Assembly: GCF_001194135.2 (NCBI RefSeq) | Contig: NC_069009.1 | Span: forward strand, 11,553,319-11,586,857 | Source of the DNA: Octopus bimaculoides | Lineage: Eukaryota | Reading direction: 5' to 3' | DNA length: 33,539 nt | Shown: positions 598 through 33,353 of the stretch, piece after piece | Layout: the number at the start of each line of letters is the position of its first letter | Numbering within the stretch: the first letter of the stretch is position 1 | Notes under the pieces: model-generated | What the model saw: the letters and a program-made list of their open reading frames with translations, nothing else | Databases searched by the model: none | Told to the model about the DNA's origin: nothing | Program-made: the position numbers and the translations under genes

Positions 598-712
598 ATT
601 TTCTTTTTCAATAATTTTGTTTTTCTTTTTTTTTCAATAATTTTTTGTTTTTTTTTTCAATAATTTTGTTTTTCTTTTTTTCAATAATCTTGTTTTTCTT
701 TTTTTTTTCTCT
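598..712 (-). repeat. Four tandem ~25-bp A-rich units at the LINE 3' end
   Basis: Plus strand (T)nCAATAATTTTGTTTTTC(T)n repeated four times. Confidence 0.8.
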
Positions 713-3300
713 TCTATTCGCTTTTAACCGGCTATACTAGCTCGGTCCCATTTGTTCGCAGCATCCTTACTATAGGCATCTATCTTTTCCTAAATACATT
801 TTGAGACAGGGACTTTCTCCCTAGAGGGTTCTTGCTTAGCAAGTGATAGTTGAAATAACTAACCAGCCCGCGTCCAGAGATAAGGTTGCCTGTCTCAGTT
901 CCTTTTCTACGCGTCATCCACAATGTATGTTTCAGTATGGCTACTACACAGAAAAAAGGCGCTTCCGTTTCCTTGTTAAAGGAGGAAGACGCTACGATCT
1001 TGATGATGGACTCAGCCGATAGCTGTACTCTTTCTGTCTCCAGCGTCAGCTGTTCCACATCAACCCCCTCAGTTCTACACATTGCACGAAGGCGTGCGTA
1101 ACAGTTTCACTGTCCCACCCGCATCTCGAGCAGATGGAGGGGGACGCCAAACCCATGCCTTGACAGCCTCTCGAACAGATAAAGCCGATCAGTAGCCCAA
1201 CCAAGCTAGGGATTTCTGGAAGTTATCCAGATACTCCGGCCCGAATGTCTCTATCGAACCCTAGAGCCACTCCCAGGACGTCGTCAGACTTGTGCTCTAC
1301 CAACCCACTATAAAAATCCACAGTGGTAGCCCCGCTGCCGGTATTACTCGCCCAGGAGAGCAGAATGAGTGCTTGTCTGCACTCATCTGCCATTCGCCCG
1401 TTCTAGGTCTACGCCTGATCCATGGGCCTAAGTCCCGTAGGGATGTTAATTGCGAGAAAAGGAACTTAATGTGCGGTGACCACAGCCTCAGCCTCGGTGC
1501 AAATTTGCGTATCATCAGCCACAGCATCCCTAATCCACCCTTTAACGATTTTTGGCAGCAGATGGAGCACCTCACAAGCGGTGATTTCCCTTCCGCAAAA
1601 AGCGGAATAGGAGCCGTTCCAACTTGTTTAGCCACAGCTTGGAGCAACGCACGACGGTTAGGCGGTAGATTATCACAGATGCTATAAATACATGTGCAAC
1701 CTTCACCCTCCGTAGCAAGGTTAACATTCTCCCAGACCAGGTGTGGGTTAGGGCAGTCACCTTACTTGTGACCTCGCTTTAGTTTTTCTCCATCTGGAGA
1801 TCTGGCCCAAACCAGACTCCGAGGAGTTTAACCAAGCCCTCCGTCCAACGTCCTACGACGCTGTTAGGAGGCATCGACTTGCCTCTCCAGGTGCCGAGTT
1901 GAAAGTCGACTGATTTTTCCTGGTTAACTTTTGCCCCTACCACCGCTTCGTATCTTTTGATAGTGTCTTCTACACGAGGTAGCTGCCCTTCATCAGACAT
2001 GATGATGGTGACATCATCCGCGGACGCCATCGCTCCTCTACCGTATCACAGATCACGTGGATCGCCCCCCGAAGCCTCAACCTCCGCAGCTGTAGCTCAA
2101 GAGCCAATATATACAAAAGCGGGGACGGGGCAACCCTGGCAAACTGAACGGTCAATCGCGTATGACTTCGAGAGGAAACCGTTCACCCGTTCGATTGACT
2201 CGATGTCGCTATACATAGCATTGATCCAGGCACGGAAAGTCGGGCCCAGTCCGACCGCCGCCAGATACCGATGGTCAACCCTATCGAATGCCTTAGACCA
2301 GTCCAAAGTCACTAGTGCCCCACTCTTGCAAGGAACTTTACTAACCCACTCTATGGTGTAGCGGATGAGGTGAAGGTTGTCCTATATCGTCCTTCCTGGG
2401 ATGGCGCATGTTTGCGCCTCTCCCACCAGGTCGCCTACGACAAACCTCATTCTCTTGGCTAACACCTTGGCCAAAATCTTTAACTCTGTGCTTAGCAGAG
2501 TTATGGGCCTGAAATTATTAATGATATCCTCTTTACTAGGGTCCTTCCGGCTCTCCCGAACAACGCGGCGAAGTGCTCGTAAAAGGCCTTACACATCTCT
2601 TCCTGTCCTTGGATCACACGTCCATGCTCATCCACCAAAGACATTATCGTAGCTTCAATGCCACGTTGAGTTTCTACCGAGTGAGCCCACCCGGCCTCGT
2701 TGATACCCTCGTGGCCCAGTGCACGTACTTTTGCCCGAAGCCTGCACCCTTCGTGTTTGGCATTGAGGCCCAAGACCGATTTCACCACCAAAACTCGGGG
2801 TGCAGAGCCCACTCTCAGCGCCTCTTCTAATACCTTAACTAATTTCCATTCTACTCTAGCCTGTTCTAGATTCAACTGCTTGCTGAATCTAATCGACTCA
2901 AGTCGAATGGCTCGTTTGAGGGCACACCACCACCGGTTATTTAACACAGTGCCGGTTAATGCCCTCATTACTGACTTCCTAATCTGACTACGGTAAGCTT
3001 CCAGTATCCAGACCCTGTCTATGTCTTTTATCTGTATGCATCTTAATCGGCACTAATTTGTGATCTGTATAGGAGACATAGATAAATTGTGGACAGCTAA
3101 AACTAGACTTATCTCCAGAATTAACTATAATCCTATCTATGTAAGACCTGATTGATCTGTTGTTGTCACTCGAAGTCTACATTGGAACGCTAGGATAATC
3201 AAGTCTCTATCGATCTGCCAGTCTAAATCACTTCAGCGGATCGACGAGGTGTGAGTTACTTTCACTATTGTTTGAGCACACGCTATCCTGGCTTGCATCT
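598..3300 (-). mobile_element. 5'-truncated, decayed L1/Tx1-clade LINE: end of APE endonuclease, RT, C-terminus and A-rich 3' region
   Basis: Minus-strand translation across stops and frameshifts: RSYIDRII and SYTDHKLV (APE), GYWKL, LDWSKAFDRVDH, QGCP and SPLLYILALE, SADD (decayed YADD, 2013-2024), AKVNQEKS, C-terminal LKHTLWMTR..KSLSQNVFRKR ending at 780. Confidence 0.9.
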
Positions 3301-3304
3301 TTTC

Positions 3305-3411
3305 TCATTAGGAAAGAAAGATGGTTTAACGTTTCGAGCAGACGCTCTTCTTCGGAAACAGAGGAAAGTCCAATAGAAGGGCACACGGAAGAAGAAAATC
3401 ACTAACCATTT

Positions 3412-3414: not shown

Positions 3415-3455
<41 letters not shown>

Positions 3456-14939: not shown

Positions 14940-15131
14940 ATATATACATACACACACTACACACGCACACACACACACAGAGGAAGCACATGCAAAAGAA
15001 TATATCTGAGTGTGTGTAATGATAAAATTGCGTGTATAGATATATATGTATATACGTATGTATGTATGTATGTATGTATGTATGTATGTATGTATGTATT
15101 ATATACGTATGTATGTATGCATATACGTATG

Positions 15132-15200
<69 letters not shown>

Positions 15201-15349
15201 TTATGTATATATGTATATACGTACGTATGTGTGTATGTATGCATGCATGTATATACGTATGTATGTATATACGTGTATATGTATGTATGTGTGTATGTAT
15301 ATACGTATGTATGTATATACGTATGTATGTATATACGTGTATATGTATG

Positions 15350-15383
<34 letters not shown>

Positions 15384-15387
15384 TATA
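14940..15387. repeat. Compound (TATG)/(TA)/(TACG) microsatellite, left part
   Basis: Direct reading. Confidence 0.95.
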
Positions 15388-15965
15388 CACAGACATGCAG
15401 GAAGTAAATAGACACCTTTAATTTTCAAAATCTTTTATTTGATATTAATTGGTTGAAGGAGAGGTTTTCTTCTAGCTGCTCGTCCATAATGCCCAAGCTT
15501 ATGCAGATATGTAACACGCGTTCTTGGACGAACTTCTAGCTGTTTTGTAAAGTCAGAAGCCTTCGAACGGGGTTCGTTTTCCACAATTCTCTTCAAATAG
15601 CGAAGCTTCCTTTTCGAGGGCCCAGGTCGGCCGGGACGAGAATCTGTTGATTTTTTTCCTTGGCTTTTGAATTGTACTATAATTCTATTAACAGTAGCAA
15701 GAGGAATTTGAAGATTTTAGACAATTTTTCGCTGGCTAACACCAGCCTCAGATTGCCCAACAATACGACCTCTTTGAAAATCTGACAGTTCTGCTGACTT
15801 TTTTGTGCGTGGCATGGTTACTCTTCGCAAATGTTTAATATAATGGCACGTGGGAGGAAAAAGAATAATTACATTGTAAATTCTACCCCGCTGAAAACAT
15901 ATTAACACGCTTAGATCAGAAATTTTGAAAATTAAAGGTGTCTATTTACTTCCTGCATGTCTGTG
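15388..15965 (-). mobile_element. Internally deleted Tc1-family element (578 bp) with perfect 44-bp TIRs, retaining only the DNA-binding region
   Basis: TIRs at 15388-15431 and 15922-15965 are exact reverse complements, with TA on both sides; reading frame 15815-15435 [35 protein letters not shown] has one internal TAA and no DDE domain. Confidence 0.93.
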
Positions 15966-16363
15966 TACGTACGTATGTATGTATGTATGTATATATGTAT
16001 GTATATACGTATGTATGTTTGTATATACGTATATATGTATGTATGCATGCATGTATATACGTATGTATGTATATACGTTTGTATGTATATACGTATATAT
16101 GTATGTATATGCGTATATATGTATATATGTATGTATGTACATATNNNNNNNNNNACGTTTGTATGTATATACGTATATATGTATGTATATGCGTATATAT
16201 GTATATATGTATGTATGTACATATATACGTATATACATACAAACGTATATATATGTATTTATATGTATGTATGTATATATATGTATATATGTATGTATAT
16301 ATTTGTATATATGTATGTATACGTATGTATATACGTATATATGTATGTATATGCGTATATATG

Positions 16364-16446
<83 letters not shown>

Positions 16447-16600
16447 GTATATATATGTATATATGTATGTATGTATATATTTGTATATATGTATGTATAT
16501 GTATGTATATGTATGTATATACGGATATATGTATGTATGTACGTTTTTATATATGTATGCATTATGTGTATATGCATATGCAGGTTTGTATGTATTTAAT
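15966..16600. repeat. Compound microsatellite, right part
   Basis: Direct reading. Confidence 0.95.
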
Positions 16601-17395: not shown

Positions 17396-18015
17396 TCACC
17401 ATATATACAGAAATATATAGGCTTATACACTTAACTACATACATACGTGCAAAATAGGTACTTACATATATACATAACTAGACAATCATATATACTCAAC
17501 AACATGCTTAAATACATACAGAACTATATACATATACATACATACATTCACATATACACACACACATGCATATATATCCATATACAGAGATTTAATGCTT
17601 ATGTCATATTTCTGACGCAATGAAAGATTCATTCAAATGCTGACTCACTATTTCTTTTCTTTCACAATTCTAAAGAAATCTTAAAATATCTCAATCTATA
17701 CTCATTTACATTTCTGCATCAATAAACATATTACTTTAAACAAATGTGTCTCTTTTCAAATCTCAGATCAACTTTTTGGATCATATTTAGAGAAATAGGG
17801 AAATCTGAAATATACACGCGCTCAAATTTATCCATCAAATAATCTATCTATACAAGTTTATTTGCCAACATAATATGGCAGCCGTAAACAAGGACGATGT
17901 TACTGTCTTTCAACCCTAGGAAAACATCTTTTTCAGTCGGCTGCCGACACAGAGTTTGTGCCCGTATAGTATATGCAAGGGAGGTCATCGCTCCCACCTC
18001 TAACCTTACGTGTTA

Positions 18016-18060
18016 CTCACAGACCTAGGTTACTCGGTAATTACCCGTCCTCGGTGTGAG
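18016..18060 (-). ncRNA. Minimal type I hammerhead ribozyme motif, core-mutated copy
   Basis: CUCACA-CCGAGGA-CGGGUAAUUACCGA-GUAA-CCUAGG-UC|UGUGAG: perfect 6-bp stem I and palindromic stem III, but U4>C and A13>U. Confidence 0.7.
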
Positions 18061-18397
18061 ACAATCACTGGCTAGTGATAGGGGCTTACTCCACTTGCAA
18101 ATACATGTATATTTTTTAAGCGATCACAGTCGCTGATCTCGCAAAGGGAAAAACAACTTGTTTTAATAGAAAAGTTTACTTGCCAATATACTGTGGCAGT
18201 CCTATACAAGGACGATGTATAGGTCTGCCACATTATGTGGATAAATAAACTTTACTATTCGGTTCTGTTACTGCATATCTCTCGCTCAGAGATTTCAAAC
18301 AAGTTGTTTTTCTCTTTACGAGATCAGCGACTGTGTGTCGCTTAAAAATATATAGTTATTGCAAGTGGAGTAAGCCCCTATCACTAGCCATGATTGT

Positions 18398-18442
18398 CTC
18401 ACACTGAAGACGAGTAGCTACCCAGAAACCTAGGTCGGTGAG
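18398..18442 (+). ncRNA. Minimal type I hammerhead ribozyme motif with intact core; predicted cut after C18436 (GUC)
   Basis: CUCACA-CUGAAGA-CGAGUAGCUACCCA-GAAA-CCUAGG-UC|GGUGAG: stem I 5/6 paired, stem II imperfect, palindromic ACCUAGGU stem III. Confidence 0.75.
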
Positions 18443-18699
18443 TATCAGGTAAGGCTAGAGATGGGAGTGATGACCTCTCTTGCATATATTATACGGGCAC
18501 AAAATGTATTCCGGTAGCCAATTGGAAAAGATGCTTTCCTAAGGCTAAATAACAGTAATATCATCTTTGTATAGAACCGCCACGTTCTTTTGGCAAATAA
18601 ACTTTTACTATTCGTATTGTTACTGCATATCTCCTCGCTCAGATATCTAAGACAAGTTGTTTTTCTTTTTTACGATATGCTACATGTATCTTATATCAT

Positions 18700-18945
18700 A
18701 CCTTGATTCTGTGTGGACTAAGTTCCTCGTTGACAGGCCGCTGGTATTTATAGAATCTTAAACACTTTCGGTGCGCAAATTAGGAACTCCTTCATAGAGT
18801 AACAGCTGCATTTGTTGAGTATATAAACAGTTTGGCTGCTTGTTTCTCTGGAAACGGTCAGAATGGTGTAGACGCCTCTGATGAAAACCCAATAAGGTTC
18901 GAAAATCGATTAAGGTTGTTTATCATTTTTTTTCAGTCTGCATAA
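18700..18945 (+). mobile_element. Penelope pLTR/retrozyme-like fragment hosting a hammerhead
   Basis: TATATAAA at ~18820 followed by the hammerhead at 18874-18916, a layout typical of PLE pLTRs; boundaries uncertain. Confidence 0.45.
18874..18916 (+). ncRNA. Minimal type I hammerhead ribozyme motif with intact core; predicted cut after A18912 (UUA)
   Basis: GCCU-CUGAUGA-A-AAACC caauaa GGUUC-GAAA-AUCGAU-UA|AGGU: stem I GCCU/AGGU, stem II AACC/GGUU, palindromic AAUCGAUU stem III. Confidence 0.8.
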
Positions 18946-18984: not shown

Positions 18985-19159
18985 GCTGGTGATTTTCTTC
19001 CTCCGTCTTCCCTTCTATTGGACTTACCTCTGTTTTCGAAGAAGAGCGTCTGCCCGAAACGTTAAACCATCTTTCTTTCCTTTCCTGAGCGTCTGCTAAT
19101 ACATTACATGCACCACGGGCTCGCGTTGTTGTGTTTTTGTGTTTGTTCTTTTGGGGATT

Positions 19160-19160: not shown

Positions 19161-19209
<49 letters not shown>

Positions 19210-22384: not shown

Positions 22385-22590
22385 AAATTTACAGAAAAAC
22401 AAACGACGAAGAGAGGTGTATAAACAACAAGCAGGTGTATTAGTTTGACGCTCGGGAAGGTGAGAAAGTGTTTTACGTTTCGAGCCGACGCTCTTCAGCA
22501 GAAAGGAGCACAAGGAAATAGACATAGTTAGAATAAAAAGAGAGAATATAAAAAAACTTATTGAATTAGCGGTCAGCCATGGCGACTATA
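22385..22590 (-). mobile_element. Related short repeat with a degenerate hammerhead (22505-22470)
   Basis: CUUU-CUGCUGA-A-GAGC gucg GCUC-GAAA-CGUA|AAAC (A6>C); downstream TTCCCGAGCGTC..CTAATAC resembles 19080-19105. Confidence 0.65.
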
Positions 22591-32239: not shown

Positions 32240-33353
32240 GGAGAAGCAAAGATTAAGAAGCAAAGAGGCAACGCGTTGCTGATTTGCTCCACGTAGGAAA
32301 TAGCATCAAGCGAATTTCCAAGTTGTTTAATGCGTCATTAAGCACAGTTTACAACGTCAAGAATCGTTTGGATAACATCAGAGGAATTCAGACGAAACGA
32401 GGCACTGGAGGAACCAATAATAAGCAAGATCCAGCGTTCCTGACTGCCCTCAAATCTAAAATTTTGAAAGATCCAACCACATCCAATGGGAAAGCTGGCA
32501 ACTGATATAAAATTTGCTGCCAAGAAATGCTGTTCACTGTGATTTAGGGCTGCAATCCTCTGCATAAACTCCACCCGACCTATTCAATAAATGTCAGGAG
32601 GCTTGAAAAGGTAACAAAAAAAAGGGTTGCTCTTCCTCAAGAGGTCTGGATCCAATTTTTAAAATATTTTGTGACGGAAAAATCCTCACTGTGGAAACTG
32701 TTGTGAACAGACGAAATGATTAATTTATTACTGAATCACCATCTCAAGTCAAGGGTGTCTTCAGAGCAAAGTATCCTGCTCAGGTGATTGTTTTGGGAAT
32801 TGTGGCATCAGATGGCAAAAAATGCCCCTGCATCTTTTCAAATCTGGTGAGAGAATTGCTGCTGATGTATATAACAAAGTGTTATGCTATCATGTCTTGT
32901 CTTGGTTTGAGGCTAATTACTCTGAAGGTAATTATGTGTGGGGTCAGGATGGAGCGTCTGCTCATATAGCGAAGAAAGTGCAAAAGTTTTGCAAAGACAG
33001 TCTTGCTGAGTCATGGCCTTCTGATTTCTGCGCCTCCTCCAGCCCAGATCTGAATGCACTTGACTATTCTATTTGGGGCTCCTTGATGTTCATCCTAGCA
33101 CAGAACACCTTAAGCAAGTTTTGAAGGAAGAATGGGCCAAATTGTCTCCACATTTTCTTATAAAGAGCTGTGGAGCTTTCAGACGCCGTATCCAATTGAT
33201 GACAGAAAGTAGTGGTGGACACATTGTGTAGAATCTCTGTTACGGACAGTAATAGTTTGTGTATAAATAATTTTGCTATACGTCGACTTTTCCATTTACA
33301 ATAAAACATTTTCAAATTCCGTTTGGCTTCCCCCAAGTTTTGCTTCTCTACCC

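What the first reader, a model, noticed from the sequence alone, without database searches (positions are those of the whole stretch)
17854..18675. Retrozyme-like ~352-bp repeat folded into a 750-bp palindrome with a hammerhead ribozyme on each strand
Seen: a ~352-bp unit is tandemly repeated (18243 vs 18595) and mirrored about a small hairpin at ~18212. Each arm contains a complete minimal type I hammerhead topology: CUCACA stem I, CUGANGA core, GGGUA/UACCC-type stem II, GAAA, palindromic ACCUAGGU stem III and a GUC site. The plus copy (18398-18442) has an intact core; the minus copy (18060-18016) has U4C and A13U. Established: short non-coding tandem units of a few hundred nt with minimal type I hammerheads and palindromic stem III define non-LTR retrozymes and Penelope pLTRs; these cleave as dimers and retrozymes yield circular RNAs. 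Inference: this is a cephalopod retrozyme-like family, here inserted with a fold-back inversion. Read-through would give long dsRNA that masks the ribozyme and could be an ADAR or Dicer substrate.
Basis: partly seen in the sequence, partly recalled or inferred. Interest (0 to 1): 0.85.

Follow-up and report, generated by a model that had tools for sequence, protein, structure and literature searches.

The report
Decayed hammerhead retroelement in head-to-head palindrome
This is an old, mutated insertion of a short non-coding mobile element that carries a minimal hammerhead self-cleaving RNA motif, laid down as two inverted arms; it belongs to an element type already known to be very common in invertebrate genomes, so it is real but fairly ordinary.

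Summary
A 352-bp unit occurs as about 1.3 tandem copies on the + strand (18216-~18684). About 1.1 copies lie on the - strand (18216 down to 17854). The arms meet head-to-head at a hairpin centred on 18212.

Each arm carries a minimal type I hammerhead with an 8-nt palindromic helix III (ACCUAGGU). The + copy has an intact core.

A descriptor scan of the whole window, both strands, finds only these two sites plus a third, unrelated intact-core minimal hammerhead at 18874-18916 (+). Shuffled windows give 0.005-0.04 hits. Rfam's hammerhead models detect none of the three.

All copy pairs are equally diverged (about 84-86%). The hammerhead is no better conserved than the rest of the unit. There is no ORF, no nearby Penelope RT/endonuclease gene and no target-site duplication.

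Best reading: a single old insertion of a short, non-autonomous, Penelope-type (non-LTR retrozyme-like) element, copied from a multimeric RNA and since decayed neutrally.

Not testable here: other genomic copies, covariation, cleavage, circular RNA and the organism. The dsRNA/ADAR/Dicer idea remains speculation.

Verdict: new member of a known kind; interest about 0.3.

The parts
17854..17890 (-). Distal partial unit of the - arm (unit positions 1-37)
   Evidence: It aligns with the three other copies of unit positions 1-37 at 28-30 of 37 identical.
17891..18216 (-). - arm main unit. It is about 324 bp and lacks about 36 nt (unit positions ~45-80). It includes the last 8 nt of a preceding unit at 18209-18216.
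   Evidence: blastn and global alignment to the + unit give 84-85.6% identity, with 30 transitions and 15 transversions.
18016..18060 (-). Degenerate minimal type I hammerhead (HHR1-). It carries U4C and A13U, and its helix I is 6 bp. The predicted former cleavage site is after C at 18022.
   Evidence: Direct reading. The relaxed descriptor finds it with 2 core mismatches. No Rfam hit.
18193..18231 (.). Central hairpin, which is the head-to-head junction of the two arms (stem 18201-18208 / 18216-18223, loop AGGACGA)
   Evidence: Rfam gives only sub-threshold miRNA and CRISPR-repeat matches there, which reflect a generic hairpin.
18216..18567 (+). + arm complete 352-bp unit, 39.8% GC
   Evidence: the repeat finder families D2 and D5 are spaced 352-353 bp apart. 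Self-blastn. GC content.
18359..18390 (+). 32-bp block, 100% identical between the arms (partner at 18069-18100), lying just 5' of the hammerhead
   Evidence: Inverted repeat I4. A perfect run of this length has roughly a 0.2 probability at 85% identity (my estimate), so it may be chance.
18398..18442 (+). Intact-core minimal type I hammerhead (HHR1+). Helix I is 5 bp plus an A.G. Helix II has 4 positions with one A.C mismatch and loop AGCU. Helix III is the palindrome ACCUAGGU. Predicted cleavage is between 18436 and 18437 (GUC|G).
   Evidence: Direct reading. Descriptor hit against shuffles. No Rfam hit. The monomer MFE fold is not the hammerhead fold, as expected for dimer-dependent minimal hammerheads.
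18568..18684 (+). + arm partial second unit (unit positions 1 to about 115). It ends before the hammerhead position.
   Evidence: 81-84% identity to unit 1.
18874..18916 (+). Neighbouring, unrelated intact-core minimal type I hammerhead (HHR2): GCCU CUGAUGA A AACC-CAAUAA-GGUU C GAAA AUCGAU UA AGGU. Predicted cleavage is between 18912 and 18913. It probably belongs to a separate, older element.
   Evidence: Found by the strict descriptor before any relaxation. The unconstrained RNAcofold homodimer is the double-hammerhead fold. Its flank has no homology to the 352-bp unit. No Rfam hit.

Best explanation
**What it is.** The locus is one old, now inactive insertion of a short (352-nt), non-coding retroelement. 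The element carries a minimal, dimer-dependent type I hammerhead ribozyme. This is the kind of element described as Penelope-like-element (PLE) hammerhead repeats, or animal non-LTR retrozymes.

**Inferred life cycle of the active family (from the literature).**
- Tandem copies are transcribed.
- Two hammerheads pair through the palindromic helix III (ACCUAGGU) to form a double hammerhead and cleave after GUC.
- This yields unit-length RNA that can be circularised.
- A PLE reverse transcriptase/GIY-YIG endonuclease supplied in trans copies a longer-than-unit (multimeric or circular) RNA into the genome.

**What is shown for this locus.**
- The integration left about 1.3 units in direct orientation and about 1.1 units inverted, joined head-to-head.
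- All copies then decayed neutrally.
- Only one hammerhead per strand remains, and the one on the - strand carries two core mutations. The locus therefore cannot release a unit RNA today.

**Shown versus inferred.** The anatomy, the motifs, the equal divergence and the lack of coding capacity are shown. The RNA intermediate, dependence on a PLE enzyme, dimer cleavage and circular RNA are inferred from the literature.
For: - The unit is circularly closed at 352 nt. The same end-to-start junction occurs three times: 18567|18568, and on the - strand 18209|18208 and 17891|17890. The element is therefore a small unit, not the end of a longer one.
- The hammerhead architecture matches published PLE minimal hammerheads in several respects. 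It is type I, has an extra nucleotide between A9 and helix II, has a G...C first pair in helix II, and has palindromic positions 15.2-16.2 with no real loop 3 (PMC4209133; reading).
- The motif is far above chance: 2 intact-core hits in the window against 0.005-0.04 in shuffles. Only the three sites appear even with 3 core mismatches allowed. There were no hits in 36 kb of unrelated loci.
- Where one arm has a helix I or helix II mismatch, the other arm has a Watson-Crick pair: G10.2/A, C11.1/G and U1.1/G. This points to a fully paired ancestor, GGGUA..UACCC.
- All copy pairs are equally diverged: arms 85.6%, tandem units 84%, and the four copies of positions 1-37 at 76-81%. This is a star-like pattern expected from one event.
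- GC is 40% and the unit is 352 bp with no ORF. ORFs are at most 53 aa and have no homologues. There are no Pfam hits and nothing recognisably RT- or GIY-YIG-like in my reading of the six-frame translations near the arms; these were not scanned against a profile library. These values match the ~170-400 nt, <45-50% GC non-LTR retrozymes (PMC7229834).
- Tandem plus inverted head-to-head insertions are typical of PLE integration (PMC8557442).
- Paired minimal hammerheads on opposite strands 100-700 bp apart are reported (PMC4209133).
- PLEs tend to insert next to earlier PLE copies (PMC6765202). This fits the second hammerhead, HHR2, 476 bp downstream.
Against: - No second genomic copy could be found. 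The searches covered the window, viral contigs, metagenomes (only two chance 20-mers), prokaryote genomes and the protein database. None of these collections is expected to hold the source genome, so the test is weak. Family status is nevertheless unproven.
- Rfam hammerhead models do not score either copy, even at E<=10.
- The hammerhead is no better conserved than the rest of the unit.
- Helix II has a mismatch in each copy. An unpaired A lies between C11.1 and G12, which is not listed among the published minimal-hammerhead features.
- The monomer, and for HHR1 also the homodimer, MFE fold is not the hammerhead fold.
- The arms share their central end (unit position 1 vs -8) but differ at their distal ends (position 37 vs ~115). 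The textbook PLE picture is the opposite: an inverted 5'-truncated copy sharing the 3' end.
- No target-site duplication was found.
Confidence: 0.6

Rival explanations
1. A short hammerhead-bearing tandem repeat was inserted or arose in one orientation only (the + arm). The - arm was made later by a DNA-level fold-back, that is a hairpin or replication template-switch inverted duplication of its first ~390 bp. The palindrome would then be a rearrangement, not an integration product.
For: - The two arms begin at almost the same unit position at the centre (position 1 vs -8).
- They end at different unit positions distally (37 vs ~115).
- The centre is a perfect 8-bp hairpin with a 7-nt loop.
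- This is the geometry expected of a fold-back duplication.
Against: - The arms are no more similar to each other (85.6%) than the tandem units within one arm (84%), so the inversion is as old as the tandem duplication.
- The same geometry is produced by twin-priming-like reverse transcription on a multimeric RNA of at least 2.3 units.
- Head-to-head inverted copies are routine for PLE-type insertions (PMC8557442).
Confidence: 0.15
2. The repeat is not a separate small element. It is the pseudo-LTR or 3'-terminal part of an autonomous Penelope-like element, left here as a heavily 5'-truncated insertion without its ORF.
For: - PLE insertions are very often 5'-truncated.
- Their hammerheads sit in the pseudo-LTRs.
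- Non-LTR retrozymes are sequence-related to PLE pseudo-LTRs (PMC8557442, PMC4209133, bioRxiv 10.64898/2026.07.22.740005).
Against: - The 352|1 junction is seen three times, and each time it continues into the same unit sequence. The repeating template was therefore 352 nt long, not ~3 kb.
- No recognisable RT or GIY-YIG remnant in the surrounding 7.7 kb. This rests on my reading of the six-frame translations, not on a profile search of them.
Confidence: 0.15
3. The arms are the terminal inverted repeats of a foldback or MITE-type DNA transposon, or a generic local palindrome. The hammerhead-like strings are then fortuitous.
For: - The region is a long inverted repeat with a small central loop.
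- Rfam hammerhead models are silent.
- The motif shows no extra conservation between the arms.
Against: - The outer ends are asymmetric (unit position 37 vs ~115).
- Each arm is internally a tandem repeat.
- No target-site duplication of 8 nt or more was found.
- Expected descriptor hits by chance are 0.005-0.04 per window, against 2 intact plus 1 degenerate observed.
- An independent second minimal hammerhead of identical architecture lies 476 bp away.
Confidence: 0.05

Closest known systems
Minimal hammerhead ribozymes (min-HHRs) of Penelope-like elements (Cervera & de la Pena 2014, PMC4209133; Lunse, Weinberg & Breaker 2017, cited in PMC6765202)
   Same: - Type I topology with a full CUGANGA...GAAA core.
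- A tiny palindromic helix III that can only form between two copies.
- An extra nucleotide between A9 and helix II.
- Short helix I.
- Occurrence as single or paired motifs on opposite strands a few hundred bp apart.
- Escape from standard hammerhead models.
   Different: - No PLE ORF is associated here.
- Helix II is 4-5 bp, against the 6-8 bp reported for Schistosoma and Drosophila families.
- There is an additional unpaired nucleotide 3' of helix II. It is seen in both HHR1 and HHR2, as C...A and A...C respectively.
Animal non-LTR retrozymes (Cervera & de la Pena 2020, PMC7229834; Li, Clavereau & Pollet 2026 preprint, 10.64898/2026.07.22.740005)
   Same: - Non-coding unit of a few hundred nt (352), low GC (40%), head-to-tail repetition and a type I hammerhead.
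- The presumed dependence on PLE enzymes.
- The preprint describes monomer derivatives as dead offspring.
   Different: - Published invertebrate retrozymes mostly carry canonical hammerheads that cleave efficiently as monomers and sit in arrays from dimers up to tens of units.
- Here the hammerhead is the minimal, dimer-dependent kind.
- The locus has only 1.1-1.3 units per strand, so there is one hammerhead per strand.
- The copies are inverted head-to-head.
PLE insertion architecture: pseudo-LTR partial tandems with an adjacent inverted 5'-truncated copy (Craig et al. 2021, PMC8557442)
   Same: - A partial tandem plus an inverted copy joined head-to-head.
- No clear target-site duplication.
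- A 37-bp terminal extension at one end, which recalls the 30-40-bp 'tail'.
   Different: The arms here share the central end rather than the distal (3') end. There is no ORF-bearing body between the repeats.
L1 5' inversions by twin priming (Ostertag & Kazazian 2001; from my own knowledge)
   Same: A single retrotransposition event yields an inverted 5' segment joined to a direct 3' segment. On a multimeric template this would give homologous inverted arms with a small overlap (here about 37 nt).
   Different: Twin priming is described for LINE-1. It has not been shown for PLE enzymes or for retrozyme templates.

Membership tests
Hammerhead ribozyme, type I | Conserved core C3 U4 G5 A6 N7 G8 A9 ... 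G12 A13 A14, an A15.1-U16.1 pair, and H17 at the cleavage site | tested here: met
   The + copy 18398-18442 has all positions (CUGAAGA ... GAAA ... U C), by direct reading and the descriptor. The - copy fails two positions (U4C, A13U). HHR2 at 18874-18916 also meets the feature.
Hammerhead ribozyme, type I | Three helices around the core, with the open ends in helix I | tested here: met
   - Helix I is 5 bp in the + copy and 6 bp in the - copy.
- Helix II is G-C, A.C, G-C, U-A in the + copy. In the - copy it is G.G, G-C, G-C, U-A.
- Helix III is A-U, C-G, C-G with a 2-nt 'loop', so it is formable only as an intermolecular 8-bp palindrome.
Hammerhead ribozyme, type I | Recognition by the curated Rfam covariance models (RF00163 and related) | tested here: not met
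   There is no hammerhead family match at gathering score. There is none at E<=10 on 71-nt inputs for HHR1+, HHR1- or HHR2. The perfect-core HHR2 is also missed, so the models appear insensitive to this architecture.
Hammerhead ribozyme, type I | Site-specific self-cleavage | not testable with these tools
   This needs in vitro transcription of monomer and dimer constructs.
PLE-type minimal hammerhead (min-HHR) | Unpaired nucleotide between position 9 and 10.1 | tested here: met
   C follows CUGAAGA in both HHR1 copies, and A follows it in HHR2. The criterion is from PMC4209133.
PLE-type minimal hammerhead (min-HHR) | Conserved G10.1-C11.1 pair closing helix II | tested here: inconclusive
   In HHR1+, G...C can be drawn as the first pair, but an extra A then lies between C11.1 and G12. 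In HHR1- that C is G. In HHR2 the pair is A-U with an extra C 3' of it.
PLE-type minimal hammerhead (min-HHR) | Palindromic positions 15.2-16.2 and loop 3, allowing a double hammerhead | tested here: met
   CCUAGG lies between A15.1 and U16.1 in both HHR1 copies, and AUCGAU in HHR2. The free homodimer fold of HHR2 is the double hammerhead. For HHR1 the palindromic helix II competes.
PLE-type minimal hammerhead (min-HHR) | Many genomic copies forming consensus families with compensatory changes | not testable with these tools
   The source genome is not in any searchable collection. Searches returned nothing real.
Animal non-LTR retrozyme | Head-to-tail tandem array with at least two same-strand hammerheads, so that a unit RNA is released | tested here: not met
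   The + arm is 1.3 units and the - arm 1.1 units. The second units stop before the hammerhead, leaving one HHR1 per strand.
Animal non-LTR retrozyme | Unit of about 150-450 bp, low GC, no ORF, no LTR/PBS/PPT | tested here: met
   The unit is 352 bp at 39.8% GC. ORFs are at most 53 aa and have no homologues. No tRNA-like sequence was found.
Animal non-LTR retrozyme | Expression as linear and circular RNA of unit length | not testable with these tools
   This needs RNA-seq back-junction reads, northern blots or RNase R.
Penelope-like element insertion | Partial tandem plus an adjacent inverted copy (complex tandem/inverted structure) | tested here: met
   The criterion is from PMC8557442.
Penelope-like element insertion | RT plus GIY-YIG endonuclease ORF | tested here: not met
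   No such coding remnant was recognised between or beside the arms. The RT at ~700-2970 (-) is LINE-like (PF00078 relatives, one neighbour locus with Exo_endo_phos). If the locus is PLE-dependent, the element is non-autonomous.

The most novel reading that the evidence does not exclude
The 352-nt unit is the dead copy of a still-active retrozyme family in a cephalopod-like genome. That family makes ~350-nt circular RNAs through dimer-dependent minimal hammerheads. Its frequent head-to-head insertions would be a systematic genomic source of long, perfectly paired dsRNA feeding ADAR editing or small-RNA pathways. Hammerhead retroelements would then be linked to the unusually heavy RNA editing of these animals.
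Probability: 0.07. Interest if true: 0.6.

Novelty: new member of a known kind. Interest (0 to 1): 0.3.

Why it matters
If the family is confirmed genome-wide, it would extend minimal-hammerhead and non-LTR retrozyme elements to a lineage where the repeat literature I could read lists Penelope-like elements as abundant but never mentions ribozymes (PMC8967140, PMC13282606).

It would also supply a clean example of a very short element that shows the tandem/inverted integration signature. That could help work out how PLE enzymes build such structures.

As a single decayed locus it has no evident function. Its practical value is as a seed for a genome-wide search.

Tried and rejected
- **Rfam.** Gathering thresholds on the whole window gave nothing. 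E<=10 searches on the 921-nt region and on three 71-nt inputs gave only sub-threshold miRNA, CRISPR-repeat, IRE and snoRNA matches, which are generic hairpin noise.
- **Other copies through spurious ORFs.** A profile of the antisense frame that is open in both arms found no hits among 5.8 billion proteins.
- **DNA pattern scans.**
  - A 24-mer and a hammerhead pattern against viral contigs gave 0 hits.
  - A 20-mer against metagenome contigs gave two hits. Both were isolated 20-21-nt chance matches with no flanking homology.
  - The hammerhead pattern against prokaryote genomes gave 0 hits.
- **Organism identification.**
  - The ORF 2501-2968 (-) is not on record and has no homologues.
  - The LINE RT gave only 40-58% identical relatives. 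One is named (Acanthosepion pharaonis, 40%); the others are unnamed ENA/NCBI contigs only ~69% identical at the DNA level.
- **Flank homology.** Sensitive local alignment of both flanks to the unit is not above shuffles. HHR2 is therefore not a diverged third unit.
- **tRNA-derived SINE idea.** ARAGORN found nothing.
- **Target-site duplication.** None of 8 nt or more.
- **Joint alignment of the three hammerheads.** MAFFT misaligned HHR2, so I made no pair-count statistics.
- **Six-frame Pfam scan by DNA reference.** I read the translations by eye instead.
- **Lunse et al. 2017.** The paper could not be opened.
Full report
**1. What is in the sequence**

- On the + strand a 352-bp unit (18216-18567) is followed by the first ~115 nt of a second unit (18568-~18684, 81-84% identical).
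- On the - strand, reading leftwards from 18216, the layout is:
  - the last 8 nt of a unit;
  - one unit (to 17891), 85.6% identical to the + unit and lacking about 36 nt;
  - the first 37 nt of another unit (17890-17854).
- The arms abut head-to-head at a hairpin: stem 18201-18208 / 18216-18223, loop AGGACGA.
- The junction "end of unit | start of unit" is therefore seen three times, and each time it runs on into the same sequence. The repeating template was 352 nt long and circularly closed. This argues for a small element rather than the terminal part of a longer one.
- No other copy exists in the 33.5-kb window.
- As RNA, 17854-18607 would form one long imperfect hairpin: -460 kcal/mol against -187 +/- 7 for shuffles.

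**2. The hammerheads**

- The + copy (18398-18442) reads CUCACA CUGAAGA C GAGUAGCUACCC A GAAA CCUAGG UC GGUGAG.
  - All 11 core nucleotides, the A15.1-U16.1 pair and C17 are present.
  - Predicted cleavage is between 18436 and 18437.
- The - copy (18060-18016) reads CUCACA CCGAGGA C GGGUAAUUACCG A GUAA CCUAGG UC UGUGAG.
- Helix III is the 8-nt palindrome ACCUAGGU with no usable loop, so it can form only between two molecules.
  - each copy has one helix II mismatch, at different positions;
  - the + copy has A.G at 2.1-1.1;
  - there is one unpaired nucleotide on each side of helix II.
- At each mismatched position the other arm has a Watson-Crick pair. This suggests a fully paired ancestor, GGGUA..UACCC.

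**3. Is it more than chance?**

- I wrote a type I descriptor: CUGANGA, helix II, GAAA, A15.1/U16.1, H17 and helix I of at least 4 bp.
- The strict version (no helix II mismatch) gave one hit in the whole window on both strands.
Dinucleotide-preserving shuffles of the window gave 0.005-0.04 hits.
- Allowing up to three core mismatches while requiring a 6-nt palindromic helix III added only the - copy.
- 36 kb of unrelated fetched loci gave none.
- The relaxed descriptor was tuned after seeing the candidate, so its significance is somewhat inflated. The strict-descriptor hit was not tuned.
- Rfam's hammerhead models report none of the three sites, either at gathering score or at E<=10 on 71-nt inputs. 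The perfect-core HHR2 is also missed, so I read this as insensitivity to this minimal architecture. It still stands as a membership criterion that was tested and not met.

**4. The second hammerhead (outside the given coordinates)**

- HHR2 reads GCCU CUGAUGA A AACC-CAAUAA-GGUU C GAAA AUCGAU UA AGGU.
- Its design matches HHR1: one unpaired nucleotide on each side of helix II and a 6-nt palindrome between A15.1 and U16.1.
- Its unconstrained homodimer MFE structure is the textbook double hammerhead, with intermolecular helices I and III.
- Its surroundings show no homology to the 352-bp unit.
- It is most simply the remnant of another, older hammerhead-bearing element. PLEs are reported to insert into or next to earlier PLE copies (PMC6765202).

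**5. Age and mode of origin**

- Identity is 85.6% between the arms (30 transitions, 15 transversions), 84% between the tandem units, and 76-81% among all four copies of unit positions 1-37.
- This star-like pattern fits a single event that created all copies from identical templates, followed by neutral decay.
- The hammerhead (82%) is no better conserved than the rest (86%), so the locus itself has not been under selection.
- The Jukes-Cantor distance between the arms is about 0.16, or about 0.08 per arm. If the published Octopus vulgaris calibration applied (JC 0.09 is about 25 Myr, PMC13282606), the insertion would be roughly 20 Myr old. The organism is not established, so this is only illustrative.

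**6. Coding capacity and neighbours**

- ORFs in the arms are at most 53 aa. The frame that is open in both arms has no homologues.
- In my reading of the six-frame translations of 16.6-24.3 kb, nothing looked like an RT or GIY-YIG sequence; they were not put through a profile search. Ten ORFs elsewhere in the window gave no Pfam hit.
- The window holds a LINE-type RT remnant (~700-2970, - strand), Tc1/mariner fragments, many microsatellites and assembly gaps.
- No target-site duplication flanks the palindrome.
- ARAGORN finds no tRNA-like sequence.

**7. Comparison with what is known**

- Cervera & de la Pena 2014 (PMC4209133) defined minimal hammerheads in PLE pseudo-LTRs and listed these features:
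  - an extra nucleotide between position 9 and 10.1;
  - a G10.1-C11.1 pair;
  - palindromic positions 15.2-16.2 and loop 3;
  - dimer-dependent, weak cleavage.
- The same paper reports [quoted passage not shown]. That is the arrangement seen here.
- Craig et al. 2021 (PMC8557442) describe PLE insertions as partial tandems, often with an inverted 5'-truncated copy abutting the 5' end and a 30-40-bp tail at one end.
- Cervera & de la Pena 2020 (PMC7229834) define animal non-LTR retrozymes as tandem units of about 170-400 nt, low GC and type I hammerheads. These are expressed as circular RNA, including in a mollusc.
- A 2026 preprint derives these retrozymes from PLE pseudo-LTRs and describes monomeric dead offspring.
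- Against these definitions:
  - the locus meets the motif and unit criteria;
  - it fails the requirement for at least two same-strand hammerheads;
  - it lacks a PLE ORF;
  - it cannot be tested for copy number, covariation, cleavage or circles.
- One geometric detail departs from the textbook PLE picture. The arms share their central end (unit position 1 vs -8) and differ at their distal ends (position 37 vs ~115).
  - That is what twin-priming-like reverse transcription on a multimeric RNA of at least 2.3 units would give, with a ~37-nt overlap.
  - A DNA fold-back would give the same geometry.
  - The equal divergence of all copies favours formation at, or very near, the time of insertion.

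**8. Verdict**

This is most likely a decayed, non-autonomous, PLE-type hammerhead retroelement insertion.
- The inverted arrangement is a known integration pattern rather than a novelty.
- "Cephalopod", "family", circular RNA and the dsRNA/ADAR/Dicer suggestion remain untested.
- It is a new member of a known kind, of modest interest. Its main use is as a seed for a genome-wide search.

Noticed in passing
window 18874-18916 (+): A second, unrelated intact-core minimal type I hammerhead (CUGAUGA ... GAAA, helix III palindrome AAUCGAUU, cleavage predicted after UUA at 18912). It lies 476 nt downstream of the HHR1+ cleavage site, in sequence with no homology to the 352-bp unit. Its free homodimer fold is a double hammerhead.
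   Followed up: partly
window 18989-19103 (+); 3310-3402 (-); 22436-22496 (-): A short dispersed repeat (93.5% and 80% identical copies) with core ...GAAGAGCGTCTGCYCGAAACGTTAAACC.... Two of the copies lie next to (TA)n/(AT)n microsatellites (19163-19206; 3415-3455). It is possibly a SINE-like element or the 3' part of the HHR2-bearing element.
   Followed up: partly
window ~700-2970 (-): A LINE-type reverse transcriptase remnant broken by stop codons. Its relatives carry PF00078, and one neighbour locus also carries Exo_endo_phos. The closest database proteins are only 40-58% identical, and the only named one is from the cuttlefish Acanthosepion pharaonis.
   Followed up: partly
window 32822-33124 (+), and the - strand frame with ...NLQIPLATVNRIIVQFKSQGKK... 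(coordinates not determined): Tc1/mariner-like transposase fragments, judged from the translated sequence only. Pfam gave no hit at E<=0.01 for the 100-aa ORF.
   Followed up: no
window 18069-18100 and 18359-18390: A 32-bp block is perfectly identical between the two arms, which are otherwise ~85% identical. It lies immediately 5' of the hammerhead and begins with TTGCAAGTGG, which loosely resembles a pol III A box. It could be chance (about 0.2 by my estimate), local gene conversion or a constrained element.
   Followed up: no
window 15041-15384, 15964-16595 and many others: Very long (TATG)n/(TGTA)n and related microsatellites, plus eight assembly gaps (N runs of 10-510 bp). This is a draft, repeat-rich eukaryotic assembly.
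   Followed up: no
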